Below, in pieces: positions 23,552 through 41,258 of a DNA stretch of 64,000 nucleotides. The notes beneath the pieces are model-generated. The model was not told where the DNA came from, ran no database searches, and was given only the letters and a program-made list of their open reading frames with translations. Position 1 is the first letter of the stretch. Every line of letters starts with the position of its first letter. This DNA comes from Vitrella brassicaformis CCMP3155 (lineage: Eukaryota; Protista; Chromerida). The DNA is taken from contig CDMY01001000.1 of assembly GCA_001179505.1 (NCBI GenBank), forward strand, positions 62,001 through 126,000. The letters are read 5' to 3'. The position numbers and the translations under genes were made by a program.

Positions 23552-25339
23552 TGTGCAGCCCGTGATTGTGACGAGGCTTGTTTTCGGAACCACGCTGCCT
23601 ACAGGGTTGCTTTCTCGGCGTCATGCCTGTTCGTGATCATGTTCCTCACCTCACTCATCGGAGGCACCTTCGCGACCAAATCACACAGTAAGCACACGGA
23701 CAGACAGACAGACAGACAGACAAGACAGACAGGCACCAGCGGATGCCATTATGTGTCGCGTGTCGTTTTGCAGGGTCGATGTTTGTGCTCAAGTTTGTGT
23801 TCATCCCGTTGATGTCTTTCGCCATGCTGTGGGTGCCAAACTACTTTTTCGTGAGCCAAAGGAACCAACAAACCAACCAGCGACCAAACAAACAGCCATT
23901 CTCGATGCTGTTGCTTGTGTTTGTCTGTCGCAGGAAGGGTACGCGTGGCTGTCGCTGTTCGTCGCTCTTCTCTTCATCATCGCTCAGGTACACACAGACA
24001 GACAGACCACTGAAGGTGTGGTGCTTCATGTTTGTGTGTGTGTGTGTGTGCGCCATTCAGTGGATGGCTCTGATTGACTTTGCCTACTCGTGGAACGAGT
24101 CATGGGTGTCCAAGGCAGAGGAGGACGACAACCGCAACTGGCTCATTGGTACGCACACACACACACACACACAGCCATACACAGCCAGCGATCTGTCCGA
24201 CCGTTTCTTTCTTCGTTTTTGGTGCTTTCTTTCCGCTGTTCATTCAGCCGTTGTCGTGTGTTCGGTCATCTTGCTTGTGGGGTCATGGACAGGGGTGAGA
24301 CACGGCACACCTGCACACACACACGTGTTGCTTGCCTCCCACACACACATTGTGCTTCGCTTCCTGCGTCCATCAGACGATCGTCATGTACGTGCACTAC
24401 AACGACCCCCTGAGCCACGGGCTGCTGTCCCTGTCGCTCATCGGCGGCATCGCCCTGCTGGTGCTCTCCATCACCGACTTCTGCGGACACGGAGCTATGC
24501 TGACGAGTTCGGTTGTTGTGGCCAACGTGACCTTCATGACGTGGTTCGCCCTCATGAGCTCCCCCATCCACAGGCAAGAGGCCGACTCGGTGGCGAAGCT
24601 CTTTTTCGGTCTGATCATCGCAGCGATTGCCCTGGGATGGACGAGGTGAGCCTGCCATAGGCAACGAGGGATGCCCCGCAGCCAATGTGTGTGACTTTGC
24701 CTACCTGCGCGTCTGTCTGTCTGTCTGTGTCAGTTCGTCGCTCGCCAACAGCCCTGATATTTTCCATGTCGAGAAGAGGGAGGCCGTCGAGCATGAGCGA
24801 GTGTCAGCCGTCGCCACACAACCAAAACCGGTTGGTAACCAGCAGCCGAAAACGCGGGAAACCAATGCATGATGTCTCTGTGTGATCCATGTGCAGGGTG
24901 AGGCGACTTCAGCGATGGAAGAGGGGGAGACGGCCGCCGGCAATGCGTCGTCTTCATCGGATGACGCGCCGCCCGACACGTACCGGGACGAGCAGGCGTC
25001 TCCTGCGGATGTGCTGGGGATCAGGTGGTTCCACTTCATGATGCTGACAGCGACGTTCTACCTGTGCATGGTGGGCAGCAACTGGATGTCCACCGACACT
25101 CGGTACGGTCAGCCACACACACACACACACACACACAGAGGGAGGGAGAGACACACGGGGCGAGGGAAATGACGCTCTCTCTGTGTCGCTCTTTCTGTGT
25201 CCATTCATTGGTTGGGTGCAGTGAGATCAACACTGGGTGGACCCAGTTCTGGGTGCAGATGGCTGGCGTCTGGCTGGTCCTCCTGATGTACCTGTGGACC
25301 CTCGTGGCGCCCAAACTGCTGCCCGGCAGAGAGTTCTGA
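23130..25339 (+). CDS. Serine incorporator (SERINC/TMS) family membrane protein
   Basis: MGAVFGACGSCCAAC start; CFRNHAAYRVAFSASCLF; QWMALIDFAYSWNESWV; WFHFMMLTATFYLCMVGSNW; WVQMAGVWLVLLMYLWTLVAPKLLPGREF C-terminus. Confidence 0.9.
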
Positions 25340-25783
25340 CACATTTCTCTGTCTGTGGGTGCGGTGTCTTTTTCATCAAGTGCGGCTGTGAGTGAGTTAA
25401 GTGTCTTTGTTCATTAGTGTGTGTGTGTGTGCGTATGTGTGCGTATGGGNNNNNNNNNNNNNNNNNNNNNNNNNNNNNNNNNNNNNNNNNNNNNNNNNNN
25501 NNNNNNNNNNNNNNNNNNNNNNNNNNNNNNNNNNNNNNNNNNNNNNNNNNNNNNNNNNNNNNNNNNNNNNNNNNNNNNNNNNNNNNNNNNNNNNNNNNNN
25601 NNNNNNNNNNNNNNNNNNNNNNNNNNNNNNNNNNNNNNNNNNNNNNNNNNNNNNNNNNNNNNNNNNNNNNNNNNNNNNNNNNNNNNNNNNNNNNNNNNNN
25701 NNNNNNNNNNNNNNNNNNNNNNNNNNNNNNNNNNNNNNNNNNNNNNNNNCCCCCCAACACACACACCCTACGCCACACATCGA

Positions 25784-27000
25784 TCACGGGGTCTTCGATG
25801 TATGCATGTAGGACAGCTGTATCAGCCTGCCGAGGAAGCCTCCAGCTTTTACAGCCCGCTTCAGCCAGCCGGCACACACAAGCTCCACACACAGCAGCAC
25901 CATAGCGACGGCCAGCGCGACAAACGCCAGACCGCCGAGACACAGCAGTACCAGTGCGGGCACATCAGCGTAGGCCCTGGTGTACTTATCATGGTAAAAT
26001 ACAAGATGGCCGATGAGCATTGCCAGGCTCCCTGCCACTATCAGCAGCAGCCCGACAAGCACACACAGCAAGATAATGCCACGGACCCCGGCCTCTCGAT
26101 GACAGCGAGGTGGGTACGCGACCTCCGAACACAGCAGCACCATGGCGACGGCCGGCACGACAACCGTCGCGAGGCCGACGTATACCATGAACCACTGTCG
26201 GTCGTGCGCCACGCTCAGGAGTGCTGCCATGCCAGAAACCGCTCCTGATGGGGCTATCAGCAGCGCCATCAGCCCGACAACCACACCCAACCGCATGATG
26301 ACACGCACCCTGGCCTCTCGACTGGAGCGAGGGATCCTTGTTTCACCTGAGGGAGGCAACACAGGACACAGAGAGATCTTCCAACCACTGGCCGGCCGAC
26401 CACCATGCACTGCCCACTTTGTTTCTCCGCTCGGTGCACGTCTGCCTCACTCACATGTGGCGGCTTGGAGCTCTTCGACCTTCCAGGTCTCGCGGTAACC
26501 TCCGAGCAGGGGCTGGGCCATGTGACACCAAGTCAGATGCCTGACGGACACACAGCGCATGTCAACACCAACACCAACAGCCAGCCAGCCAGTGATCAAG
26601 GACTTACACACACACACACCTACCTCTTGCACACCCACCCACCCACCTGAGTGCGGCGGCAGCTGCCCTCGAGGGCTGTTGGGAGCTCCTCGAACGGGTA
26701 AGATGCCACATCACGTCCACAGAGCGACGTCCACAGAGCCGACGTTCGGCAAGCAGATAGGGGTCGAAAAGCGTTAACGAATTCGCAGGCAGGACAGACC
26801 AGAGGCCAGAAGCTAAGAGCCTTGACAGACTGCAGCTGTTGCCACAAGATGGGCCCTCCCTCCCCTCCCTCCCCTCCCTCCCCTCCCTCTCTCCCCAATC
26901 CAAGCTCGCAGACCGGGAGAGCCGAATCCGCGGCGGATGGATCTGGCGTCCTGGAGCAAGGAGAGGCTGAGATCTATCGTGCAGTATGCACAAGAAGCGT
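25784..27000 (-). CDS. Hypothetical multi-pass membrane protein with an internal repeat (AVAMVLLC x2)
   Basis: Terminal exon 26340-25784 has about 5 hydrophobic segments. Short upstream exons have GT-AG borders (~26520-26450, ~26740-26650). Start uncertain. Confidence 0.45.
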
Positions 27001-27219
27001 TTCAAGCTGATAGCTAGAGGGCCCACTCACTTGTCGACGCAATGAGGCAAGGGCGGCACTGCATGATTGGCAATCAAATGCATCACCCATGATGCCTGGC
27101 TGTTGGATGAATCAAAACGTCTTTCAGATGGATGAATCAATCGGTGCGCCGAAGCAGCATCAAGCAACGAGGATGAATCAACATGCTGGCAGTGCCCTGC
27201 CTGATCATGGACACCCAAC

Positions 27220-29311
27220 ATGAGACCAAGGATGCTGCTGCTATTTCTCACGTCGGTACTTCTGCCCCTGCCCCTTCCTCTGCCTCGGTCAGCCGAATGC
27301 ACTCACCGCCAGGCAACACCGTGTTTCACTACAGGGCCGCTGCAGCGGCCAACTCATGCCCTCATCTCAAGACGCCACCGACAACATCGACGCACTAGCC
27401 CATTACAAGTCCAGCGGCATCAGCAGCAGCAGCAAGACCATCAGCAGCAACAGGGTGGTGTCCAGGCCCCTGTGCGAGTGGGCATTGTGGGTGGCGGGCT
27501 GTCGGGCGCATGCTGTGCGTGGCTGCTGTCCATCTGCAACACCACTGAGCGGCCTTACGAGGTGACGGTCATCGAGAAGCGGCCCCATCCCGGAGGCGCC
27601 ATCTATTACCCACAGGCAAGCCAGAGCACAGAGCACACACAGACGTCTCACACCTGAGGATGGTGCGGTGTGGTGTTTGGTTGTCATGCCTGTCAGGTGC
27701 CAGAGGGCCGCATCACGTCGGAGTCTCATCTGCCGTCAAGTGCTTCGTCTCACGTCTTGCCGATCAACGCTGGCTCGCCAGTGCACGTCGGCAACTTCCT
27801 CAACCTCAACATGCTCCTGCGGCACTTCAACGTCACCGAATGGCTCGTCGGCATCGGGCCGAACCGACATCTCGCCAGCCCGTCCGAGCCGCAGCTGTTC
27901 CGCCTTGTGCATATCCTCAATCCTTCTGGCCAGCAGTTTGTTCCCCCTGCCAGCCTGCTGCGCAAGCCGCTGCTGTGGCTGGATGTGGCGAGGTTTTTCC
28001 TGCTGGTGAACAGGGAGAGGGACATGACTTATGAGGAGTTCTTCGCGAAGCACCCCTTCTCTCGTCGGCTGCGGAATCTGCTGGACTGGGCGATACGGAC
28101 TTATGAGTTCGACCATGCGCCGGCGATGCTGCGGCGGCTGTCGATTAAGGCGGCGCTGGCATACCTCTACCAATCCATGTTCCTCTCGCTCATCTTTCGC
28201 GATGCTTTCCAGGTGACACACAATGTGGGCCCACACTGACGCATAGCCTCTCTCCCTCCCTCTGTGTGCGTGGGTGTCAGTTTGAGTACCCGTCATGGTT
28301 CCTCGAGCAGGGGTGGTTCGCGTCGATCCGCAAGGAGTCCCTCGCCAAGCTGGGGGAGAGGAAGAGGGGCCACCCCCATGCCGATGAGACGGTCGCCAGG
28401 GCGTCATCGGATCCGATGTGGACTGCCGATCGGCCGCTCAGCTGGCTGCAGTACCACTGCATCGACAGACGGAAGGTCAGTCAAACACATGAATGGATGG
28501 ATGGATGGATGGCTCTTGGGTTGTTGCGTCCGCGTGAGTGTGTGTGTTCAGCTGCTGGCAAAGCTGTTGGAGCCTGTCCATGCGATCAGATGCCACACGC
28601 AGATCGTCCGGGCACAGTTGACGGTAAGCAAGTCCGTCAGCCACACACCACAGCACATAGGATGAATGCATCGATGTGCGTGTGCCTCCCTTCATGGCCA
28701 TGTGTGTGTGCAGGCCGACGACACAGTGCAGCTGACGGATCAGCGGGGCGACACTCATGTGTTCGACAAGGTCATCTTCTCAGCGCCGCCAACAGAGATC
28801 GCCATGATGCTCCGACACACCCACACCCACACCCACTCCCAGCAGCAGCAACCGGCTGAGCAGAAGGAGCTGTCGCGGGTGTCCGAGTGGCTCGAGAGCC
28901 TCACCTCTGAGACGGTGCGCGTGCAGATCATCCCCCGCTCACAGATGTCATTCGACAAGGGTGGTGGATTTCCGCCAGAGAGCCGGCAGTTCCCCCGGGA
29001 GTCGGAGAGTGCTGATGACTGGCACTTCTACTCCATCTACGACATCACTGAGGTGAGAGGGCATCCCCCCCACCATCGGCCATGCGGCAGTGGTGTGTTT
29101 GTTCGTTGTGTGTGGCGCAGGTGAGCCCCGAGAGGCTGCCGGCGTCATTGCTGAGTGTGGCGGTGCCGGTGTCCTCCGACGGCAGTGGGGCTGTGATTCT
29201 GGACCCTTCCTACAACCACACGGGCAAACTGCACCCACTCAACTCACAGGTCAGTGACTGCCCACAGAGAAGAGACCTCCTGTGTGTCCTCATGGCGCGT
29301 TTGTGGTAATC

Positions 29312-29342
<31 letters not shown>

Positions 29343-29947
29343 GACTACCCATGGCTGCTGGCTGACTGCGCCTACACCAAGCACCGCCAAGACATGCTGC
29401 GCCACATGCAGGGAATGGCCGACGGCAGACTGTTCTTCACAGGACACATCGGTCAGCGACACACCGACCCCCCAGGCCCATCAGGCAGTGTCTGTGTGTG
29501 TGTGTGTGTCTGTGTGTGTGCAGTCAACGGCGTGTTCAAGAATATCGAGTCGAGTGTGCGTGCGGCGTGTGAGCTGTGTGAGGAGCACTTCAGTGCACTG
29601 CCGCCGTGGCGCTTTGTGCTGCCGCCCGAGAGTGGGCTCGACTTAGACTGGTGGATGGAGGACCTGACACACGACACGGCGAAGGCCCTGCAGAGAACGG
29701 CCAAACAGGTCAGTTTGTGAAAGAGGAGAGCGGCCCCGATGCATCTGTGTGTGTCTGTGTGTGTGTGTGTGTGCAGCTGTTTCAGCTGTCCTTCACTGCG
29801 TTGATTGCAATGGCCGTGCGGGCGATGCGAAGAGGGGCTGAGGGTGGGCAGCCGTCTGATGAGGGTGATAAGGGTAATCGTGCGTCTGTGAAAATGTCCG
29901 CAGGAGTGCAATCTGATAGACCGGCTGTGGCTGTTGCGTCCGATTGA
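27220..29947 (+). CDS. FAD/NAD(P)-dependent oxidoreductase (amine oxidase-like fold) with signal/transit-like N-terminus
   Basis: VRVGIVGGGLSGACCAWLL..VTVIEKRPHPGG; FDKVIFSAP; C-terminal RLFFTGHI..VNGVFKNIESSVRAA; hydrophobic tail. Confidence 0.7.
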
Positions 29948-31321
29948 CTGAATGGATATGGACATAAGACACATTGATTGGTGTGCATGTGTCTTCCATT
30001 TATGTATGTGTGGGCGTGTGTGGCATATACCCTGTTCATTCTGCGTTACACACGCCGCACAGTGGAGGCACACGCACATAAAAGCAATCCAGCCATCCAT
30101 ACACGCAACACAGAGGTCGGCATGCAGGCCACGGCGCACACCCAACCACACACGTGAGGAGGACTCGCGGACAAAGGAAACACACACACACACACTCTCA
30201 CACACAAGAATCGTCAGCGTGAGCAGCGTGAGCAGTGTGAGCAGGTCCAGACCACAAGACTACACTCAACTCGTATCCATGAGATTCAATCCGATTCCCT
30301 CGTTTTCGCGGGAAGGCACCTGCCAAGTGAGCTGCTGATGTATATCACACGCACTCATGAAGAATGTACATATACAGCGACAAATTAATTCAAGTTGAAG
30401 AAGAGAGAGAGACACTCGATCGTTTTTCGTGTGCAGTGCCTGCACGTCGAAGTCTGCACAGATCTCCCGTGTGCCGTGTCTGCTGTGCGTGCCCGTGAGA
30501 AGGGCAGCAGGGCTCGCCGGCGTCTCTCGGATGGGAGGGAGGGAGATGCCGACACATCAATGAGACCGTCCTGACCTGCACCGACGGCTCATCAGCTTCA
30601 TCGATCGCCTCAGACACACTGCTCTTCTTGTTGCTCGTGGCCGCGTTTGTTGCTCTTCTTGCCACGTTTCGTCCCATTGTGATCCGATTGGCGGCGGCGG
30701 TGCTGCTGGTGCGGACACGTTGGCCGGCTGCTTGCGCTTGCGGTAACTGTCCGACAACGGGGAGGGGGGCGGGTCGAAGGATGCGCACGGACTGCTCCTG
30801 AGAGCGACGTAGGGGCCGGGGGACTTCTCGGCCATGATGAACCGTCCAGAGGGAGTGATGGTGCGTCCTGGCTTGTGACTGACACTCCGACGATTCCTCC
30901 AGGGTCGGGCAGGGCCGACGGGCGGCAGGCGACGTTCTACAAGGTCCCCTGGCGAATCACTGACACATACACCCCACGAGAAGAGCCGTCCCAGATGTAG
31001 ATCTCAGGTGCCCACTCGCTGTCGGCCGCCTTCCTTGAGAAAGGCTGATGCGTCTGAAGGGCTGCCCGAGGCTCCGCGGATACTCCGCCCTCCTCCGCCG
31101 GGCCAGTACGTCTCAACCCTCCATCACCGCCGCCACTCCACGACCCGACGCTCACCGACTCCATTTCAGCCGCACCCACCGCCAGCGCCTTCGCGATGTG
31201 GACCGCCCGCGCCTGCCGGGCCCTCTCGGCTCTTGTTCCTCGTTTTCCCTGACCTCCGTGTTTACAGACCGTTGGAACCTACACTGTATGAGGCAAATCA
31301 GCTTCCGGAGGCGAGTGCCCC

Positions 31322-32717
31322 ATGGCCTTCACGCGCTTCTCTCGTGTGGTTGTCCTCTGCCTGGCCCTCACGGTGGCTCACCTCATCCCCTGCGGACACG
31401 CAGACTGCGAACCGGATGTCCCGGGCAGCTGCCCCCGTGAGTCACAGCACGAATAGCTCATTCAGTCCGCATTTTTGGCACCGTTCTTGCATTTCTTTAT
31501 GGTCGCCTCAGGCATAATTGCGGGCAACCCTACTGGATACGACCCGGACAATTATTACGACGGCAATCTGTACGCAGCGGGCTCCGTGTTTGCCGATCGA
31601 GCCGTTTTTGCCAAGGGCAGTATCTACTCCGACGACGACGTCACTGCCCCCGATGACGTCTATGCCTTGGAAGATGTCATTGCTTTTCGTGATGTAGAGG
31701 CCTTCGGTACAGTGCGTGGCAGGAATATAATTACAGGCAACCCTACTATACTCGACAATGTTGACCTTGAAGACAGCTCGAACGACGGCACTGTGTTCGC
31801 AGCGGGCTTCGTGTTTGTCGAAAGAGGCGTTACTGCCAGTGAGAACGTCGTTGCCTTCAAGGACGTCATTGCCATCGAGAACGTCTTTGCCACGAGAAAT
31901 CTCACAGCTGGGGATGCACTGTTCGCCGACCGTAAGCATCAGCAGAAAAATCTGTTGTCCATGTCTTGCGCTTGTTGAACTCACTGCGCTGCCACCTGTG
32001 TGTTCAGGCATAATCCTCGGTGATGCTGATACGCGATATCCCGGATGGCGATATGAAGTGAGGGCAGGAGACATATTTACGAATGGCGTTGTGACCGCCC
32101 GTGGTAAGCTGCGGGAAGTGAGCCTCCTTTCTGATTGCGCCGCTTGAGATTACTGTGGTTCCCCCTCAGAATTTCGCGCGAATTCTGGTTTGACAGCAGG
32201 GGTCTGCCGTTGCGGCGACGAAACGTTCAGCCGGCGTGTGATTGCTGGTGAGGCTGTCGAGGTGCAGAGCAGTGACCTGCCCACGGCTGACAGCCAGACA
32301 GCCGAGTGGGGCGAGGGCCAGCGGTCGGCTGCTTACGTCGATGCCTTCCGGCAGCTGCCCGTGCACTCTTATCAAGACGCTCGGCTGGGCCTGGTCGCTG
32401 ATGAAGTTCGGCGACTCCTCCCATCGGCTGTGCGCACATTCGCTAAACATGAGATTGACGGAGAGCGGAGACGCAGTGAAGCGACGGAGGCCCCTGAAGA
32501 GGCAGAGGGAGAGGACAATGAGGCTGACGAACAGATGACCATCGACCTCACACAGCTGGTCTTCACGCAGATGGCCGTCATTCAGGACCTCATCGATGAG
32601 AAAGAGCAGATGGGCGAGCGAATAGAGGGCCTTACGAAGACCATTGAGGCCATCGTGGGACGCATTGCGCGTCTCGAGGACGGCAGTGGCGGTGATGGGC
32701 CAACCGGGCCCCATTGA
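31322..32717 (+). CDS. Secreted hexapeptide-repeat (beta-helix-like) protein with C-terminal peptidase S74 / intramolecular-chaperone-like domain and coiled coil; 4 exons
   Basis: Signal peptide MAFTRFSRVVVLCLALTVAHLIPCGHA. Three phase-1 introns. Six-residue repeats GSVFAD RAVFAK GSIYSD DDVTAP DDVYAL EDVIAF. C-terminus SSD..AFRQLPVHSYQDARLGLVADEVRRLLPSAV..IDLTQLVFTQMAVIQDLIDEKEQMGERIE. Confidence 0.65.
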
Positions 32718-33699
32718 TGCGCTGCAGCAGATGGCCAAGGGACTCATGGCGCCCTAGGCCATGTGTGCGAACACGATGTGTGCGTGGACTGAGAGAGAGG
32801 GATCTTGACAATGTCATGTGCACGATTAGCGCTCGTACTACTGCACTGCACGTCCTTCGGTCTGTCTTGTTTAAAGCGGCAAGAGGCCATTGGTGCGGTG
32901 TACATTATTGTTCGCTTTGTGGTCGACATTACATGTGGTTCTGTCCCTGAGGTGCACACACGAAAAGAGAGCTCTATGTCAATTGTTGCTATCTCTTCTG
33001 CACGGAAGTCTATGCTGTGTGCGTGGCACCGGCGTCGTTGACTGACTTCACACAAACACGGTGCAGAGACATTTTGTCGTTACTTTGTTCGTCATGCGTG
33101 TGAGTTCCTACCTGGTGTGCCTGTCTGCCTGCCTGCCTGCCTGCCTGCCGGAAGTAGTCTGTCACTCACTTCACGAGTAAAGAAACGCGCCCTGTCCTCC
33201 ACGGTGCTGAGAGATGTGTGTTGTGACAGGTTTTGGTATCTATCGTTGTGGGCTCCGATTCAAAACGGAGACACGTGAGTGTTAGTGTGGTTTTGCGGTG
33301 TGGGTGGGCAATTCCTTCTGTAAGCCTTTGTGTGCACTTCATCTCCGGTCAAGCCAATGCCAGAAGCAGGTGTCCACTTCAATCACCGAAACTATCGCAC
33401 AGACAGACAACTAAATTTGACATTACTGTAATTGGCACCTAGGTGCCCAGTCCCAGGAAGGCGCAAACACCGAAATACGAAGAAATGCACAGGCGACCGG
33501 CAAAATGAACACGTCACGGTCATCGGTCGCGCAATTTGCCAATCATGCAGTCAGTCAGGAGGAAGGAATGCACTCCATAAAGATCGATTATCCACAGAGA
33601 GATAAGTCCCGAAAGACAACCATAAATCCACACACACCACACCAACACAGCAGCTAGAGGGTGGGGTGCCTCACCGCCACTAACGCACACACAGCAGAC

Positions 33700-34230
33700 A
33701 CACACGGTCGACCGCACGATGTGTCTGCGGCACGATGACCCACCGCACCTCGCCCACCGCATGTCAGCGAGGGTCTCACGCTCCCACTGACGTAGACCAG
33801 ACACACGCACCTCCAGCCCACAGCCCTCAGATATCGTGTCTTGTCCGTCGACGCCGTCACGCCACTCGATGATGTCGCTCTTGAACTGCCCTCCAGACGG
33901 CAGCTGTGTGAACCCATCACCGCCGCCCTGGCCACCGGCTGTGTCCAGGAGACCTCCTGACGCCGCAGTGTGGCACCATTGCCATCGGTCACACCCACAC
34001 TGACCAACAGCCATACACACAGAGATCCTTCTGCACTGGCATTCATCGTTGTATCGGCGCGTGCACGTACCTGCTGGCCAGCTGCCGTAGGTCCAGGTTG
34101 ACGTCGTCTTGCGGATGAAGCGCCCTCCATCTCCTGCACCAAGATGTACAGCCCGCCGCCGTCGGTGCAGACATTGCGGCCCTCAAACAGACCGACCGCA
34201 CGTCCAGCCAGGCTGCTCACAGACGATGCC
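33700..34230 (-). pseudogene. Decayed gene: small VGLF-G domain exon + FKBP-like cassette with deletion and frameshifts
   Basis: AVGLFEGRNVCTDGGGLYIL then a frameshift to HPQDDVNLDLRQLAS. Acceptor gtcag|tgtgggtgtg at 33999. The cassette lacks the middle strand (QLPSGGQFK/SDIIEWRDGVDGQD) and shifts frame after ETLADMR. Confidence 0.6.
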
Positions 34231-34538
34231 ATCCTGACAGATGGGACACGCACCAGGGACACGCACCAGAGAGGAAACGCAAATATGAACGGGATCATCA
34301 GATCTCGGTCAGGTTTTGGTTGCACGTGATATCAGCTGACCTATGAGATGCTCTTTCGTCTGTTGGCTCACGACAGCTGCGGGCTGCAGGACGATCGCAG
34401 GCCTTCCCTTCTCGAGAAAGCGAAGTCCACACCGTCAGAGGAGCAGGGAGAGCTCCCACCTGTGGTCTGCAAGAATTCGATTCATCAACAACCGAGAGAG
34501 GGCGACAAATCGTGCACTTGTGTCGTGGCTGTCGCGGG

Positions 34539-36355
34539 ATGGCTGTGTGGCTGTTTGCCGTCCTCTTGGTGCCCTGGGCGGCTGTCGATGGGTTCGTAGG
34601 ACCACCACTCACACCACTGCAGCCGCAGACGCCGCCAACGTCACGCATCAACCGACTCAGAGGACGTAAGCCAACACTAACACACACAGACAGATCTCGC
34701 GGTTGGGTGAGCATCACTCGTGAATTGATGTGTGTGTTTGTGTGTTTGTTTGTCTGTGAGTCTGTGCAGGGCGGTGCGTTGCCCTTATGAGCAGTGGACC
34801 GGTTGGTCTGTTGGATGGCTGTGCCGTTTATGAGGACGGCAAGGGTGGCTATGCGTTGGAGGCGGCTGGCCAGCGGTTGCCCATCGAGCCATCATTCCAC
34901 TCACACATCAAGTTCTGCATCAAACAGCACCGGTGAGCGACCTACAGACACAGCCAGGTCTGCTTTCAACCCCGACTTGGTGTTGGTTGTCAGGTCGGCT
35001 GTCGGCAGCGAGAAAGGCCAAGAGGAGAAGGACTCCGACGGCGATCAGCCACCACCGGCGGCCGGAGCAAGGGCAACAGCGGATGAAGGGGCGGCGGCCG
35101 GCAAAGGTGACGACACGACTGACGATGGCCTCGTGGGACATTCATTGGACCCTCGACTTCGTTACAAGGTGGTGCATCAGGGCACTGGCAATGCGCCCAC
35201 AATGAACTCGACAGTCAAAGTGGGCCTTACTGTGTGGCGGGATGCCTTCCACGGCAACCACACCTTGTGCGATGTCCGTGTGGCGGAGTTTCCTGTGCCG
35301 GATATTGCTGATATTAGTGATATTGCTGATATTGGTGACGAATTCCGTGACGAGTTGCTGTCGATGCGTGAGGGCGAGGTGAGGCGATACTTCCTACCAG
35401 TCAACGGGAATGAGGGCGTCTTTGTGGAAGCTCGGTTGGTCAGCGTCTTAGATGGGACCCGGTGAGCGCAGAAGCACACAGGTCGACGGGTGTGGTGCAG
35501 CCCTGTCTTTCAGGCCGCCTCCTGCCGGCGTCGGGAGAGGGTTGTTCAAGGGTGGCTTTCCAGGTCCACCCCCAGCTGGCGCAACTTATGAGGTCGTCAG
35601 GGAGGGCACCGGCAATGTGCCTACACTCAACTCAACCGTCAAACTGGGCCTCACTGTCTGGCGGGATGCCTTCGATGGTAACGACACCTTCTTCGATGCT
35701 CGGGAGTGGGAGAGTTCTGTGCTTGTGGATGATGAGTTGCTGTCGATGCGTGAGGGCGAGATGAGGCGAGCCGTCCTGCCGGCCGACGACCATGAGGGCG
35801 CCTTTGGGGAATGTCGGTTAGTCAGCGTCTCCAATGGGGCCCGGTGAGCGCACAAAGACAACACTGAGTGGGTGCTGCCCCTCTCTGCTACTCTTCTCGT
35901 CTAATACATTGTCGGTGTGTCCTTTCAGGCCGCCCCCTGCCGGCCATGAGAGAAGCCGCCCACCCTCACCGCCCGCAGCAGCAGGAGCAGCAGCAGCAGC
36001 AGTTGACGAGACAGCGGACAGCAAAGACGGCACCAGCGGTGATGTGCTCTTTCGACTCTACCCCTCTGGCGCCTATCATCAAGTGGTGCGACCGGGCAGT
36101 GGACCTAAACCGACACGCAACCAGCGGATCAAGGTCGACCGCATCAGGTGGAATGACGACTTCGATGGAGAGGACAAGATAGGCGAGTACCGTGGGGATG
36201 TGAGGCGTGTGTCTGAGTGGGATGAGTGGGTCCAGGAGGCCCTCACGGACATGCGTGTGGGTGAGGTGCGGTGCGTCATCGCCCCAGGCAGACTGAGACC
36301 AAATTTTGGAACGAACACTATGTACGCTGAGTACACGCTGGTGGCCATTTTGTGA
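34539..36355 (+). CDS. Signal+transit-peptide protein: small VGLx-G domain followed by three tandem FKBP-like cassettes
   Basis: MAVWLFAVLLVPWAAVDGF then a P/T/R-rich segment. Exon ~34770-34932 (PVGLLDGCAVYEDGKGGYALEAAGQRLPIEPSFHSHIK). Cassette exons 34994-35461, 35514-35843 and 35929-36355 are joined by phase-2 GT-AG introns (cg|gtgagc twice). Confidence 0.7.
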
Positions 36356-36878
36356 GTGAGCGATTGAGTCTGCCTGACTGTCTGGTTGAGATTGCTTGGC
36401 CGTGGCAAGGAGCGATACTGCCCGTCCCCATGTGTGTGGGTGTGCGGGGTTTGGGATGTGTAAGGTGTTCTGGCCTTCACTGCTAGGTGGCTGCAATGGC
36501 TGACCTCTGTATACAGTCGACTGACTGACTGACTGAGTGGATGACTGACACAGATGGGGTGGTCCATCAGGTGGGGGATTGGTCGTATGTGATTTGTGAC
36601 GCGGGAGGGAAGGAACGAATCGATGGATGAGTGAATGCATTGCAAAACCAGTGACACATACACATTATAAAGAGGAGATAGTGGGGACGTCGGAAAAGGC
36701 GTCGGTTGTGGGAGATCCGCCATCTGCATGCGATCCTGCAAGCTCGCCGGCCCCCACCGGCCCCCCACAGAAGAATTCGGCGGGAGAGCAGGAGGGCCTC
36801 CGTTGCTCGAACACTCCTCCATTCTTCAAGCAGCCCACTTTTTCTGAGTGACGTGCCATCCCCTATCCTCGAAGCGTC

Positions 36879-38336
36879 ATGGCCTGTCCGCTGAGGAGGT
36901 ATCCCTACCGTGACCGCACGCCGTCCGACCGGCTGCTGGACATCGTGCAGCTCAGGTCCGACCTGCTGGACAAGCGCGAGAGCGACCTCAAGAGCCGCTA
37001 CGAACTCATCGACGAGAACACGTCACTCCGACGATACAACAAAATCCTCGAAGACGAAGTCGAGCAACACACAGAGGGGGAGGGCAGCAAACAGAGAGAG
37101 GGACATGACATGTTGTGTGTTTGGCCTTCCTCGCCCACTGATGGATGCAGGTTGACGAGCTTGAGGCGGAGAACAGCCGCCTGGCGAATCGTTTCCGCAC
37201 CGCCCTCGCCCTCGAGGACCAGGCGACGAGCAGCGCCCGCAAGCTCAACGACGAGGTGGACACGCTGCGCAAGACGGTCACGGACCTGAGCGACAGCAAC
37301 ACCGGCCTCCGACACGAAAACCGACGGCTCAGGGTCGGTCACACACACACACACACACAGACAGCGGCGCACACACCTGACTGTCTGCCTGCTTATGTCT
37401 GTCTGTCTGTCTGTCTGTGTGTTTGTCAGTATGCGGTTGACTGTGTGGGCAAGCCGCTGTGTTGGTCGGGCATCGGTCCCGTGGGCGGCGGTGTGTACGT
37501 GGAGACCATCCAGTGGCGCGTCACGGGCATGACCCGCAAGCTCCGCAGCATCCCAATGTACAGCGCCATCACCAGCCCTATCCTCTCAAGTGCCCGACTC
37601 GGACTCTTCAAGTCAGTCAGGCACACAAGAGAGAGAGAGAGAGAGAGAGGGAGAGATCGATGGGGAGGGTCGATGTGTTTGTCTTTGCGTGTGTGTTTGT
37701 GTGTCGTTGTTGGTCACATTTCAGGGTTGAGTTTGATTTCTATCCCAATGGTGCAGCGGGCGCCCCGCCGCGGGCATGCACCGTCGTGTTCCGGTAGACA
37801 GAGAGAGACATTCATGAGAGAGAGAGAGAGAGAGAGAGATCTCTCGTTCGGGAGGGGGAGAGACATGACAGAAATGACGCCTGTGTGTGTGTGTGTGTGT
37901 GTTGGCATGTCAGGTGCGACAAGGGCGTTACACTCAAGTTCCAGTTGTTTGTGGGCAGCAAGCGGACCATCCCCATCGAATACACATTCACCGGTACTTG
38001 CCCCCCCCCTCCTCACACTCCACACGAGATCACTTGCTGTCTCTCTCTCTGTCTCTCTCTGTGTGTGTGTGTGTGTGTGCATGTGTGTGTCGTGCAGGGT
38101 ACGGCGGCTACCGTCACGACTTCAAGAAGGTGCGTGACGAGGTGGAGCTCGACGACACCCTACTCGTCGGCGTGGACATCCTCGAGTGCTGCACCTGGGC
38201 AAGCCCCATCTGCCCGCCTGCCGCATGCGCACTTCCTCCCACCACATGCGCCCTCGCGCCGCCCTACTGCACATACAGGTGGGTGCGTCGTGGCAGAAGG
38301 AGAAAGGACATAGCGAGACGTTTGTGTCTGAGTTAG
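36879..38336 (+). CDS. Coiled-coil + MATH/TRAF-like domain protein
   Basis: Heptad-rich exons 36879-37330, then ETIQWRVTGM..SAITSP, FRVEFDFYPNG, LKFQLFVG, and GYGGYRHDFKKV..DDTLLVGVDIL, which are MATH-like strands. Confidence 0.6.
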
Positions 38337-38773
38337 GCCGCTGTCTCGTGCTCTCAGGCCCCGATCGTGCGCGCTCGGCAGGAAGTACCTCACCGACCTG
38401 TAGATCGACGAAGCCCATCCCGTCCATCCAATACCTGCCTGTCTGTCTGTCTGTCTGAAGGTCTGTCTGTCGAATGGATCGACTGAGTGGATTGATGCCA
38501 TGAGTGAGAGTGAGAGTGGGTGTGAGTGCACTGCCCGATCGCTGGCTGTCGTCTCGTCTGACTGAACGACCGACCGACCGGTTTGGTGTGAACGCAGAGG
38601 GACACGAATTAGCAAAAAAAGGTGGAGGCTTGGAGGGATCGAATGAATGAGTGAGTGAATGATGACCGTGGGAGGAAGTGCTAGTGTGTGTGGTATGCTT
38701 TCGAGCCTTGAGTCGCACAGATGAAGATGTAAACAAGACACACACACGCACCCGTACACACACACATGGTGGG

Positions 38774-39757
38774 TCATCTCCCACCCAAATCTGTTGTCAT
38801 CTCATGCAGCAACGCATCCGCCTCCTGTCTCACTCTTGCAAGCTCCTCCATGTTCTCTCTCGTTTGCGCCTGTCTCGCCTCTATCCTCTGCTGCATCTCC
38901 TCAGCCCTCCTCTGCAGCTTCGTTGCCGACTGCTCAAGTGCTGCGTGTCTCTCCGCCATGCTTGTCCGCTCTTTCGTCTGGATGACGTCCTGTGCATGGA
39001 GGCTGGCTGCTTCCGCGAGGGTTCTCTCCTGTTGTCTCATGTAAGCTCCCAAGCTGCCCCTCGCACCGATGTGCTGCAGCTCCCTTGTTCTCTCCAACAC
39101 GTGGGCGATATTCTCTCGCCATCTCTCTCGGCACTCTTGCAGGTTGTTCCGATGTCTCGCAGCCTCGATGAGCAGCCACGCGGCCTCGGATGTGACTGTT
39201 TCGATGCCCAGATGTTGACCGTCTTTGCCCGGAACCCTTGCGGAGAGATCTCTTGTGTGTGGCGGCGCTGCCTTCTGAGTGGAAGCCAGCACGAAGGGCG
39301 ACGTGGCAAGGGCCGCCACAGACGGATAACTGCACCTCTGAAGGTCCTGCACATGAAAGCAAGCGGCACAAATGAGTGGACGTGATGACCACCCCATGGT
39401 GCCCCTGTGTCAGTGTCTGCCTACCCGCACACATCGGCTAAGCGTCCGGCAGGTGTCGTACGTCTTGACGCTGGCAGCCCGACAAAGGGAGAATTCGTTG
39501 TTGAGAGAGTGGATGTGGCCCTTCCACCGCCGCAAGAGAACATCGGCATCCGCCTCAGATCGCGGAATAGGGGCTCTGTTGGTGTCCATCGATATCTGTC
39601 TGGGAAGGGGATCAAGGGGGATCGCATGCATGCGCTTGGAGGGCGGCCCCCCAGTCTCAAATAATGGGATTCTCCCACATCTGTTGAGAGACACCCGTGA
39701 GTTCTTTGTCCGTGCCAACACTGCGTGCCCGCAAGCGTGCAGCACTGACCCACTCAC
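38774..39757 (-). CDS. Hypothetical coiled-coil protein
   Basis: Long open frame 38774-39397 with a heptad pattern (AALEQSATKLQRRAEEMQQRIEARQAQTRENMEELARVRQEADALL) and an upstream open exon. No recognisable domain. Confidence 0.4.
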
Positions 39758-39881
39758 TCACTCACTGACTCACTTGACTATACACACCACCATGCCAGAA
39801 TACAGCGCCGTGCAGCTCTACAGCTAGGTGGACATCCAATCCCTCTGCCCGTCCTCTCCACACAGGTGTGGTGGCCTGATT

Positions 39882-41258
39882 TCATCGGAGGCAGTACATC
39901 AGCACGGGATACAATTGCTGCACGACAGACAGCCAGGCAATGAAAACACACCGATCGATCGATCTGGCCAGTCACTTACCAACTCACCTTAGGAAAGTTG
40001 GGCTGCCTCATGTCGAGCAGCAGGTTCATGCCCGCCCGGGTGAACAGCTCGCGATAGTGCGAATCTGCCCTGTTGGTTGGACCGACAAAGACAGCGGCGA
40101 AACGAACTGCATCCAACCAGTGAGTGTGGGGAGTGGACTGTGTTTAGCCTCACCTCATGATGGAGTTGTCGCTTTTGTCGACGTGGAAGCCGCCGTCCAG
40201 CACCACATTCTCCTTCAGCACCACCACACCCTGATTTCAGACACACACTCGGACACACACGCCCATTCGCATGATACAGACATCCAGATCGTGTGTGTGT
40301 GCGTGCGTGCCTGTGGTCTGAGTGCTGTTTTGCATCTCTGGAGGAAGGACACGAAGTCCTCGTCCGTCAGGTACAGGCTCACCTGACACCAAAACATCAT
40401 GGTGGCCATGTGTGTCCTGTCGGCTGTGTGAGGGTGTTTATTGTGTTGTGTTGTGGTGGTTGCCTCATCTGGCTGACCCACTGGACCCAGATGCAGTCAT
40501 ATCGGCCGGCCTCAGGCACAAACGTCTGCAACGCCTCACAGTCGAACCTGCACACACAATACGCACCCATCACAAGACACACATCAGACAGACAGATGTG
40601 CGCATGTGGCATATGCTGCTCACCTCTCCACCCGCTGTCTGTCGAGCAGCGTCTTGGCCTTCTCAACATACTCAGCCCGCGGCTCAACCACGTCAGCCTG
40701 AACACACACACACACACACACACGCACACACAGACATCGCCTCCCGCTCTTTCTTCGCTTCACGCTCTCCCCACTGACGTGTTTGAAGCGGTGCAGCAGG
40801 CACCCCTCCGTCACCCGTCCGATGCCCGCCCCACAGTCGAGTGCCCGGCCCCACTCACACGGCCCTCCCCTGCCGGCAGGCAACTTCCCGATCTTGTCGA
40901 GGAACCGGAGGGAGCCGGACAGGTCGGTTGGCGACACGTTGCCATAACCTGCACACACACTCATGCTGACGATAGGTCAATGGCTGTGCTCACCTCCCAG
41001 CACGCCATCGACTGATATGGCCTGCTGCTGCATGCACATCACACAGATGCAGAGGCGTCTGTACAAGCAAGAGTCTCACATTCATCCACAATTCTGCCCC
41101 TGTGTGCCTCGTACCTTCCAGTACTCCTCTGCCCTGGCATACCACTGTTTGTGTTTTGCGTGGTCTCCACCGATCTCCTCATCCCAGAGCGCCTGGCAAG
41201 AAGGGTACTTGCGGCCATCCGAGTCCTCACCCATCTCTAATCCTGAAGGAACTGTCAT
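39882..41258 (-). CDS. NTMT1: Alpha-N-terminal protein methyltransferase 1 (NTM1/NTMT1 family)
   Basis: WYARAEEYWK; VDGVLGGYG.VSPTDLSGS; RALDCGAGIGRVT; DVVEP; YDCIWVQW; YLTDEDFVSFL.RC; VLKENV; DKSDNSIMR; final exon QLYPVLMYCLR*. Confidence 0.9.

What the first reader, a model, noticed from the sequence alone, without database searches (positions are those of the whole stretch)
31322..32717. Secreted phage-tailspike/MYRF-like protein: hexapeptide beta-helix repeats + S74-type chaperone + coiled coil
Seen in sequence: a signal peptide; three blocks each starting II[A/T/L]G with 6-residue periodic repeats (alternate hydrophobics V/I/F, acidic turns); then QSSD..FRQLPVHSY..LGLVADEVRRLLPSAV..IDLTQLVFTQMAVIQDL and a terminal coiled coil. 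Established knowledge: the S74 intramolecular chaperone (l.pv.y..G.iAqev..v.PeaV..vdy..l..Aiq.L) folds trimeric beta-helices in phage tailspikes and MYRF, and self-cleaves at an S-D-x-R-x-K site. Here SD is kept but the R/K is not apparent (SSDLPTAD), so autocleavage may be lost. Unlike neighbouring genes, its introns lack CA repeats. Inference: a eukaryote-secreted trimeric spike or fibre, possibly horizontally acquired.
Basis: partly seen in the sequence, partly recalled or inferred. Interest (0 to 1): 0.7.

Follow-up and report, generated by a model that had tools for sequence, protein, structure and literature searches.

The report
Secreted algal fibre protein, dead S74 cap
This is a real four-exon gene of the alga Vitrella brassicaformis for a probably secreted protein: a six-residue-repeat beta-solenoid followed by a diverged, apparently non-cutting copy of the three-chain "chaperone" cap of phage tail fibres and animal MYRF, then a coiled coil. 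It is one of about 16 such genes in this genome, and databases already label the domain.

Summary
Window 31322-32717 (+) holds a four-exon gene with three phase-1 GT-AG introns. It is Vitrella brassicaformis CEM38770.1, which UniProt names "Peptidase S74 domain-containing protein".

- **N-terminal part:** a signal peptide, then three II[A/T/L]G modules with 6-residue periodicity (z = 5.1).
- **C-terminal domain:** Pfam PF13884 does not hit it. Profile-profile comparison with bona fide S74 domains gives 95.8-96.4% probability (E about 1e-9). A low-confidence AlphaFold model finds MyRF ICA, phage S74 fibres and S74 Atlas clusters as its nearest folds.
- **Catalytic residues:** the Ser-Lys dyad is absent, since the first 91 residues of the last exon contain no Lys. 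Self-cleavage is therefore probably lost.
- **Repeat fold:** the repeats model, at low confidence, as a right-handed beta-solenoid, not an LbH enzyme fold.
- **Family:** about 16 loci in this genome, seen elsewhere only on contigs of one metagenome assembly.
- **Origin:** introns sit at module borders, GC equals the genome's and the neighbours are ordinary. I saw no sign of recent horizontal transfer.
- **New point:** the family's conserved C-terminal tail, ending GLMAP-stop, lies intact but one frame off just after the annotated stop.

Trimer state, cleavage and expression are untested. This scan has already reported related S74 genes, live and dead, on other DNA of this genome.

The parts
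31322..31436 (+). Exon 1: start codon, signal-peptide-like N-terminus (residues 1-27, predicted cut after G-H-A) and an acidic cap with two conserved Cys (C29, C37).
   Evidence: The signal-like N-terminus and the Cys pair are conserved in paralogs. The cleavage site was judged by eye with the -3/-1 rule; no predictor was run.
31437..31511 (+). Intron 1 (75 nt, GTGAGT..CAG, phase 1).
   Evidence: The junction reproduces P0001.
31512..31931 (+). Exon 2: two modules (IIAGNP.. and IITGNP..), each followed by runs of six-residue units (hydrophobic-x-Ala-x-x-acidic).
   Evidence: periodicity z = 5.1 at lag 6; 4-residue strands with 2-residue turns.
31737..31802 (+). 66-nt in-frame stretch that the public annotation removes as a GC-AG intron (22 aa). 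It encodes the start of module 2 and is probably exonic.
   Evidence: Comparison with P0001. The stretch parallels the start of module 1. No RNA check was possible.
31841..31898 (+). 18-nt tandem repeat (about 3 copies, 76-81% matches), which is a hexapeptide-unit duplication at DNA level.
31932..32007 (+). Intron 2 (76 nt, GTAAGC..CAG, phase 1).
32008..32103 (+). Exon 3: third, short module (IILGD..).
32104..32169 (+). Intron 3 (66 nt, GTAAGC..CAG, phase 1).
32170..32717 (+). Exon 4: C-x-C junction, diverged S74/ICA-like domain with an acidic insert, coiled coil and the annotated stop.
32205..32213 (+). C-x-C motif (residues 12-14 of the exon-4 product), conserved in most paralogs just before the S74-like domain.
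32268..32276 (+). No Lys follows it.
   Evidence: The register is not statistically supported.
32301..32609 (+). S74/ICA-like core: helix 1, beta-hairpin, helix 2, strand, acidic insert (32448-32525), strand, and the start of the long helix.
   Evidence: hhalign 95.8% and 96.4%. Fold matches to MyRF ICA and S74 proteins. Secondary structure.
32547..32684 (+). Long C-terminal helix (residues 126-171) with a heptad pattern: Ile at 'a', Leu/Ile at 'd' in the last three heptads. It corresponds to helix alpha-4 of the ICA trimer, extended.
   Evidence: searches (pLDDT 79-96; aligned to MyRF 595-705), PMC8326128. The heptad assignment was made by eye.
32710..32757 (+). Family-specific C-terminal tail (P-I-D-A-L-Q-Q-M-A-K-G-L-M-A-P-stop). 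It is intact but lies in the +1 frame relative to the annotated CDS.
   Evidence: GLMAP-stop occurs 8 times in the genome, each time next to a family member, with 0 matches for the reversed-pattern control.

Best explanation
The gene encodes a secretory-pathway protein of Vitrella brassicaformis built like a viral fibre. In order it has a signal peptide, a small disulfide-capable cap, an acidic beta-solenoid made of six-residue units (three exon-sized modules), a C-x-C junction, a diverged S74/ICA-type domain and an extended coiled coil.

Shown here: the gene structure, the repeat periodicity, homology of the C-terminal two thirds of the domain to bona fide S74 domains, absence of the Ser-Lys dyad, and membership of a gene family of about 16 loci in this genome.

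Inferred: the ICA-like domain and its coiled coil bring three chains together from the C-terminus, as in phage fibres and MyRF. Without the catalytic Lys the cap is not cut off, so it stays as a permanent trimerisation hub. The product is then an extracellular or cell-wall fibre or adhesin rather than an enzyme or a transcription factor.

The window copy either truly lacks the family's conserved GLMAP tail through a one-base frame offset in the Gly/Ser linker, or the assembly has an error there.
For: - **Gene model and identity:**
- **Periodicity and beta-solenoid:**. In one search, right-handed adhesin and phage beta-helices fit at 2.3-3.2 A over 144-172 residues. For example, tapirin 4wa0 gives Z 13.5 and rmsd 2.5 A.
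- **S74 homology by profile:** hhalign 95.8%, E 7.4e-9 against 17 PF13884 domains. 96.4%, E 1.3e-9 against Vitrella canonical S74 C-halves, with the coiled coil excluded from the aligned columns. The family HMM scores positively on all 34 bona fide S74 proteins and on the second exons of PF13884 loci.
- **S74 homology by fold:** the three best PDB Foldseek rows are MyRF ICA 7dc3. VIA gives Z 5.5 over 96 residues. The named rows of the viral library's top 50 are almost all ICA/S74, tail-fibre or neck-appendage proteins, with E from 3.5e-3. Five of 7 Atlas rows are PF13884 clusters at rmsd 2.4-3.7 A.
- **Dyad:** no Lys in residues 1-91 of the exon-4 product and none conserved in paralogs. In MyRF, S587A or K592A abolishes cleavage, while trimerisation rests on the alpha-4 coiled coil (PMC8326128).
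- **Family:**
- **Secretory features:** signal-like N-terminus and conserved Cys pairs across paralogs.
Against: - No member reaches any score against Pfam PF13884. A plain HMM search of PDB sequences also finds nothing.
- Both AlphaFold models have low confidence: mean pLDDT 61 and 52, from alignments of only 13-14 sequences. All fold matches have weak E-values or middling Z.
- The N-terminal third of the S74 domain is not significantly aligned.
- Trimer formation, lack of cleavage, secretion and expression were not tested.
- The out-of-frame tail may mean this copy is impaired.
Confidence: 0.6

Rival explanations
1. This copy is a decaying or non-functional paralog. The frame offset has cut off the family's conserved C-terminal tail, and the gene may no longer be expressed.
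For: The conserved tail lies in the +1 frame after the annotated stop. The closest paralog (L002/P0002) has the same offset, and its tail has already decayed with an internal stop. No transcript-derived copy of P0001 is in the protein collection, whereas the paralogs P0009/P0052 and P0053 have MMETSP records.
Against: All four exons are open over about 390 codons, with canonical splice sites. Differences between the window tail and its paralogs fall mostly on third codon positions of the tail frame: 6 of 9, 9 of 14, 8 of 11 and 11 of 18. The offset is therefore recent, or an assembly error. Losing 14 residues beyond the coiled coil need not inactivate the protein.
Confidence: 0.2
2. The protein still processes itself, using a non-canonical nucleophile/base pair, for example a Ser of S-S-D or of the S-x-x-A-E-W stretch with another base.
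For: A Ser-Asp pair is present at residues 34-35. A Ser or Thr four residues before the invariant Trp is common in the family. In MyRF, alternative cleavage sites appear when the normal centre is disturbed (PMC8326128).
Against: There is no Lys in the first 91 residues and no basic residue at all between R22 and R51. The candidate Ser positions vary among paralogs: S, A, L, T, N. K592A alone abolishes MyRF cleavage.
Confidence: 0.1
3. The repeat region is a single-chain, bactofilin-like polymer-forming solenoid. The protein would then build filaments or sheets rather than discrete trimeric fibres, with the C-terminal domain only bundling them.
For: UniProt calls paralog P0005 'Polymer-forming cytoskeletal protein'. 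Three of 10 members give weak FapA beta-solenoid hits, E 0.03-0.1. Atlas feature neighbours include a cluster in which 28% of members carry Bactofilin, at score 0.83, which is a lead only. The monomer model is a single-chain right-handed solenoid with six-residue faces.
Against: No Pfam Bactofilin hit at E up to 5. The signal peptide and Cys pairs point to an extracellular protein, whereas bactofilins are cytoplasmic (established knowledge). The S74-type domain is known only as a trimeriser of fibres (PMC8326128, PMC12220804). A monomer AlphaFold run cannot show an intertwined triple helix.
Confidence: 0.1
4. The gene is a recent horizontal acquisition from a phage or a eukaryotic virus, or lies within an integrated viral element.
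For: S74 fibre genes are ubiquitous in polinton-like viruses integrated in protist genomes (PMC12220804). The assembly holds a 34%-GC locus (L016) with a canonical S74 fibre-like ORF.
Against: The gene has three spliceosomal phase-1 introns at module borders, and paralog L004 also has introns before its modules. Its GC of 0.57 equals the genome's. It has 16 dispersed paralogs. Neighbours include Serinc and TSC22-like ORFs and nothing viral. An ancient viral origin of the domain is not excluded.
Confidence: 0.05

Closest known systems
[quoted passage not shown]
   Same: It is a C-terminal domain behind a beta-rich fibre region. The order of elements is the same: helix, hairpin, helix, strand, strand, long coiled-coil helix. 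Motif equivalents are G-L-x-A-x-E-V..P..V and x-I-D/N-(Y/L)..L.....Q. Support: profile-profile probability about 96% and nearest folds.
   Different: It falls below detection by Pfam PF13884. It lacks the Ser-Lys dyad. It carries a 26-residue acidic insert and a longer coiled coil, plus a family-specific tail. It is encoded by an intron-bearing nuclear gene with a signal peptide.
MYRF (myelin regulatory factor) ICA domain, PDB 7dc3
   Same: It is the best solved-structure match: Foldseek ranks 1-3, and VIA Z 5.5 over 96 residues, model 47-160 on MyRF 595-705. It is a eukaryotic S74 domain whose trimer is driven by the alpha-4 coiled coil (PMC8326128).
   Different: There is no NDT80-type DNA-binding domain and no transmembrane anchor. 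There is no counterpart of S587/K592. The protein is secreted rather than ER-anchored and bound for the nucleus. No Pfam MYRF_ICA or NDT80 hit was found.
Canonical S74 proteins of Vitrella itself
   Same: Same genome, with spliceosomal introns. Their second S74 exons are the sequences most like this family.
   Different: They keep S-D-x-R-x-K and pass the Pfam cut-off. They lack the hexapeptide modules and the GLMAP tail. One of them (L021) has independently lost the motif.
Right-handed beta-helix adhesins and phage receptor-binding proteins (tapirin 4wa0/6n2b, phage Andhra 8egr, SRRP 5nxk)
   Same: The monomer model of the repeat region superposes at 2.3-3.2 A over 144-172 residues, with Z 9.7-13.5.
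   Different: There is no sequence similarity (6-16% identity). The model confidence is only 60-73 pLDDT. Six-residue faces are shorter than in pectate-lyase-type helices.
Left-handed beta-helix (hexapeptide-repeat, LbH) enzymes such as LpxA, LpxD, GlmU and gamma-carbonic anhydrase
   Same: Six-residue periodicity. They give the top Foldseek rows (E about 0.1) and VIA Z 10-13.7. One paralog has a weak Vat-family hit.
   Different: All these matches have rmsd of about 11 A. I read this as a match in the contact pattern only, with opposite handedness. There is no Pfam Hexapep hit, and the repeat pattern (hydrophobic-x-Ala-x-x-acidic) differs from the LbH consensus.

Membership tests
Peptidase_S74 / ICA domain (PF13884) | Match to the Pfam model at or above its cut-off (22 bits) | tested here: not met
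   No hit at E up to 1-5 in the window exons or in 10 paralogs. The six-frame search of the whole genome with PF13884 finds 9 other places and none of this family.
Peptidase_S74 / ICA domain (PF13884) | Homology to bona fide S74 domains at profile level | tested here: met
   hhalign of A1 against A2 gives 95.8%, E 7.4e-9, over 70 columns. A1 against A4 gives 96.4%, E 1.3e-9, over 52 columns without the coiled coil. Only the C-terminal two thirds is covered; the N-terminal third gives 9% probability.
Peptidase_S74 / ICA domain (PF13884) | ICA fold (helix-1 collar, beta 'donut', long alpha-4 coiled-coil helix) | tested here: inconclusive
   The model has mean pLDDT 61. Its nearest matches are MyRF ICA (E 0.15, Z 5.5), T5 pb1 (Z 3.6), viral ICA/S74 proteins (E from 3.5e-3) and S74 Atlas clusters at rmsd 2.4-3.7 A. 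These are consistent, but each is individually weak.
Peptidase_S74 / ICA domain (PF13884) | Ser-Lys catalytic dyad (S-D-x-R-x-K; S911/K916 in endoNF, S587/K592 in MyRF) | tested here: not met
   The first Lys of the exon-4 product is residue 92, and there is no basic residue between R22 and R51. No Lys is conserved, and the Ser is variable, in the 14-sequence alignment. Reference residues are from PMC8326128.
Peptidase_S74 / ICA domain (PF13884) | Position at the C-terminal end of a beta-rich fibre or stalk | tested here: met
   About 150 residues of six-residue beta repeats precede it.
Peptidase_S74 / ICA domain (PF13884) | Trimerisation and trimer-dependent autoproteolysis | not testable with these tools
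   No multimer prediction is available. It needs expression, SEC-MALS and mass spectrometry.
MYRF family | NDT80/PhoG DNA-binding domain plus a transmembrane segment around the ICA domain | tested here: not met
   No such Pfam hits in P0001 or its paralogs. The only hydrophobic segment is the N-terminal signal.
Hexapeptide-repeat left-handed beta-helix (PF00132) | Pfam Hexapep match and a left-handed solenoid | tested here: not met
   No Hexapep hit. LbH structures match the model only at about 11 A rmsd, while right-handed helices fit at 2.3-3.2 A. The model confidence is low, so handedness is provisional.
Bactofilin (PF04519) | Pfam Bactofilin match; cytoplasmic polymer-forming beta-helix | tested here: not met
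   No hit at E up to 5 or in NCBIfam. The only leads are a UniProt name on paralog P0005 and a 0.83 Atlas feature score.

The most novel reading that the evidence does not exclude
The family is a domesticated viral-fibre gene that has expanded in a chromerid alga. A catalytically dead ICA cap, fixed to its fibre and lengthened by a coiled coil and a family-specific GLMAP C-terminal signal, serves as a permanent trimerisation and anchoring hub. The hub carries acidic hexapeptide beta-solenoid fibres of the cell wall or sporangium. This would be a eukaryotic extracellular matrix component of viral descent, with exon-sized solenoid modules shuffled through phase-1 introns.
Probability: 0.2. Interest if true: 0.65.

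Novelty: new variant of a known kind. Interest (0 to 1): 0.4.

Why it matters
S74/ICA domains are understood as self-removing folding caps of viral fibres, and as the release switch of MYRF. Here is a eukaryotic, intron-bearing, secreted family in which the cap has lost its cutting residues but stays conserved. It is fused to a six-residue-repeat solenoid and carries its own conserved tail.

If that reading is right, it shows the cap's trimerising function being kept on its own. It would also give a handle on the unknown cell-surface and wall proteins of chromerid algae, the photosynthetic relatives of apicomplexan parasites.

The gain is moderate, for three reasons. The domain is already labelled in UniProt. 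This scan has already reported live and dead S74 genes in the same genome. No function has been tested.

Tried and rejected
- **Pfam, NCBIfam and PDB sequence searches:** Pfam and NCBIfam scans of every exon and of 10 paralogs gave no S74, Hexapep, Bactofilin or MYRF hit. A plain profile search of PDB sequences with the family alignment returned only a coiled-coil chance match. phmmer of the repeat region against PDB found nothing useful.
- **N-terminal third of the domain:** profile comparison with the Vitrella S-D-x-R-x-K exons was not significant (9% probability, P 0.0037). Forced or global hhalign runs put the canonical S-D at a third place (S-R-R) with zero confidence. The ancestral cleavage position therefore stays unassigned.
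- **LbH fold:** rejected provisionally because of the 11 A rmsd.
- **Origin:** I tried to see whether the family is closer to Vitrella's own S74 genes or to bacterial and phage ones. The scores are similar, so there is no conclusion and I built no tree.
- **A short intron restoring the tail frame:** rejected from the sequence. No GT..AG pair in 32680-32725 gives the right phase, and the length would be under 50 nt.
- **My own exon model:** it is 22 residues longer than P0001. Exons were searched by reference, and full-length work used the database protein P0001.
Full report
**What is there.** The window is nuclear DNA of Vitrella brassicaformis CCMP3155. The protein encoded at 31322-32717 is identical over its last 181 residues to P0001, which is CEM38770.1 / UniRef100_A0A0G4H582, "Peptidase S74 domain-containing protein". 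The assembly size, 72.7 Mb in 1064 contigs, fits.

Reading the DNA and translating each exon by reference gives this model:
- Exon 1, 31322-31436.
- Intron 1, 75 nt.
- Exon 2, 31512-31931.
- Intron 2, 76 nt.
- Exon 3, 32008-32103.
- Intron 3, 66 nt.
- Exon 4, 32170-32717.

All introns are GT..AG and all are in phase 1. Introns 1 and 2 each stand directly before a module that begins I-I-x-G. The public model P0001 agrees, except that it removes 31737-31802 (22 residues) as a GC-AG intron. That stretch encodes the start of the second module and parallels the start of the first, so I think it is exonic.

Exons were searched by reference, and full-length work used the database protein P0001.

- **Periodicity.** Hydrophobic residues in exon 2 recur every six positions: autocorrelation z = 5.1, 3.9, 3.2 and 2.7 at lags 6, 12, 18 and 24 against 2000 shuffles. 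The unit is hydrophobic-x-Ala-x-x-acidic. Part of it is also an 18-nt DNA tandem repeat at 31841-31898.
- **N-terminus.** Residues 1-27 are basic then hydrophobic (GRAVY 1.36) and are followed by an acidic stretch. That suits a secretory signal, not a plastid transit peptide. This was judged by eye.
- **Cysteines.** Two Cys pairs recur in most paralogs: C29/C37 after the signal, and C-x-C at the junction to the C-terminal domain.
- **Charge.** The whole protein is acidic, pI 4.5.
- **Microsatellites.** CA/TG arrays are common around the gene and absent from it. With introns of only 66-76 nt this says little.

**The C-terminal domain is a diverged S74/ICA domain.**

Direct tests fail:
- No PF13884 hit in the window exons or in 10 paralogs.
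- Nothing in a plain profile search of PDB sequences.
- A six-frame search of the whole genome with PF13884 finds nine other places but none of this family.

Those other loci are useful. They are canonical Vitrella S74 genes with S-D-x-R-x-K, split by introns. Their second exons look strikingly like the window protein.

Profile-level tests succeed. I aligned 14 family members (A1) and compared this profile with two others:
- Against 17 bona fide PF13884 domains (the 34%-GC Vitrella-assembly locus L016 plus 16 metagenomic and bacterial proteins fetched with it): 95.8% probability, E 7.4e-9, 70 columns.
- Against seven Vitrella canonical S74 C-halves: 96.4%, E 1.3e-9, 52 columns that do not include the coiled coil.

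The family HMM also scores positively on all 34 bona fide S74 proteins. It picks the S74 second exons out of 614 ORFs.

Fold-level tests point the same way. An AlphaFold model of the last exon has low confidence, mean pLDDT 61. Its element order is helix, hairpin, helix, strand, insert, strand, long helix. Its nearest neighbours are:
- **PDB (Foldseek and VIA):** MyRF ICA 7dc3 at Foldseek ranks 1-3 (E 0.15-0.55), and the T5 fibre chaperone at rank 7. VIA gives Z 5.5 over 96 residues at 5.1 A, and Z 3.6.
- **Viral library:** the named rows of the top 50 are almost all ICA/S74, tail-fibre or neck-appendage proteins, with E from 3.5e-3.
- **ESM Atlas:** five of seven rows are PF13884 clusters, including MYRF-like ones, at rmsd 2.4-3.7 A over 92-104 residues.

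Each line is weak alone. Together with the profile result I accept homology.

**The cutting residues are gone.** In MyRF the dyad is S587/K592, equivalent to S911/K916 of endoNF. Either alanine mutant abolishes cleavage, while trimerisation rests on the alpha-4 coiled coil (PMC8326128).

In the window protein the first Lys of the exon-4 product is residue 92. There is no basic residue at all between R22 and R51. No paralog has a conserved Lys there, and the candidate Ser positions vary.

Where the ancestral S-D lay is unresolved. There are three candidates:
- A Ser just before the invariant A-E-W, by extrapolation from the MyRF structural alignment.
- S-R-R, from the forced hhalign run.

None is statistically supported. 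The conclusion that self-cleavage is probably lost does not depend on the choice.

**The repeat region.** No sequence family matches it. There are only sub-threshold FapA solenoid hits in 3 of 10 members, and one Vat-family hit.

The full-length model has mean pLDDT 52, and 60-73 over residues 55-155. It shows 4-residue strands with 2-residue turns throughout.

An exhaustive structural comparison gives two classes of match:
- Right-handed beta-helix adhesins and phage receptor-binding proteins fit at low rmsd. Tapirin 4wa0 gives Z 13.5 at 2.5 A over 154 residues. Phage Andhra 8egr gives Z 10.8 at 3.0 A.
- Left-handed hexapeptide enzymes have similar Z but about 11 A rmsd.

I read the second class as a match of contact pattern with the wrong hand. 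So the region is probably a right-handed three-faced solenoid, not an LbH. A monomer prediction cannot tell whether the real trimer intertwines.

**Family and origin.** The last exon has 17 matches at 16 loci in this genome. In 1.84 billion representative proteins it has only 15 hits. One of these (P0014) is a spurious repeat protein. Of the ten I looked up, six are Vitrella records, one has a Vitrella cluster-mate, and three occur only on environmental contigs. The two of those that I traced come from one metagenome assembly, ERZ893784.

Two paralogs have MMETSP transcript records. This one has none.

Paralog L004 has introns at the same kind of place, directly before its modules. The gene's GC of 0.57 equals that of the window, and the neighbours include Serinc and TSC22-like ORFs. 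I see no sign of recent transfer.

An old viral source of the domain remains possible. S74 fibre genes are ubiquitous in polinton-like viruses integrated in protist genomes (PMC12220804).

**An unexpected detail.** Most paralogs end with a conserved tail, G-P-I-E-A-L-Q-K-x-x-x-G-L-M-A-P-stop.

In the window this tail is intact at 32710-32757, but in the +1 frame relative to the annotated CDS, which stops at 32715-32717. GLMAP-stop occurs eight times in the genome, each time next to a family member, with zero matches for the reversed-pattern control.

Differences between the window tail and four paralog tails fall mainly on third positions of the tail's own frame. The tail was therefore under selection until recently.

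The closest paralog (L002) has the same frame relation, but its tail has decayed with an internal stop. Either the window's offset, somewhere in the Gly/Ser linker at about 32690-32706, is recent, or it is an assembly error. I could not decide which without reads.

**Mechanism, with shown and inferred parts marked.**
- **Shown:** the gene structure, the periodicity, S74 homology of the core, the absent dyad, and the family.
- **Inferred from established knowledge of S74 domains:** the ICA-like domain and coiled coil (Ile at 'a', Leu/Ile at 'd' in the last heptads) assemble three chains from the C-terminus and template the upstream beta region. Lacking the Lys, the cap stays attached. The C-x-C may add inter-chain disulfides. 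The secreted product is an acidic fibre or adhesin of the cell surface or wall.
- **Confidence:** about 0.6.
- **Rivals:** an impaired copy (0.2), non-canonical cleavage (0.1), a bactofilin-like filament (0.1), recent transfer (0.05).

**Novelty.** UniProt already labels the domain. This scan has already reported canonical and "dead" S74 genes on other DNA of this genome. No paper links Vitrella with this domain. I rate it a new variant of a known kind, with interest 0.4.

Noticed in passing
L016 (G000:C484:52316-55474), ORF L016:1345-2478:-: A 34%-GC locus in a 57%-GC genome carries a 378-codon open frame with Asn/Thr-rich repeats and the best canonical S74 domain of the assembly (52.8 bits). 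Its nearest relatives are metagenomic and bacterial 'tail fiber domain' proteins (48-55% identity). It is a foreign element, either viral or contaminant.
   Followed up: partly
window 31737-31802: The public annotation (CEM38770.1) splices out 66 in-frame nucleotides as a GC-AG intron. The stretch encodes the start of repeat module 2, so this is probably a mis-annotation or an alternative form.
   Followed up: partly
L021:1402-1617:+ compared with L022:1498-1722:-: Within the canonical Vitrella S74 subfamily, one paralog has G-E-S-T-L-A-E-E where its sister has S-D-G-R-Y-K-T. This is an independent loss of the cleavage motif in the same genome.
   Followed up: partly
L002:1960-2100 (G000:C77): The closest paralog (P0002) stops at the same place as the window gene. 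Its former GLMAP tail is visible in the +1 frame but has decayed, with an internal TAA and altered end.
   Followed up: partly
P0003 (G000:C637, L003): One paralog has several tandem copies of the coiled-coil unit, three R-L-E ends and two GLMAP motifs. This suggests the tail module can be duplicated.
   Followed up: no
L025 and L026 (ENA assembly ERZ893784): Family members P0013 and P0004 lie on 2.2-kb and 5.8-kb contigs (GC 0.56-0.58) of one metagenome assembly. P0004's contig also carries diphthamide-synthase fragments. This looks like a Vitrella relative in an environmental sample.
   Followed up: partly
window 33118-33149 and flanks 24000-40000: A (TGCC)8 array lies about 400 nt downstream of the stop. 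Many CA/TG dinucleotide arrays sit in neighbouring intergenic and intronic DNA.
   Followed up: no
window 23743-24657 (+) and 37145-38134 (+): Neighbouring open frames match Serinc (E 8.6e-7) and, below its cut-off, TSC22 (E 7.8e-6). These are ordinary host genes.
   Followed up: no
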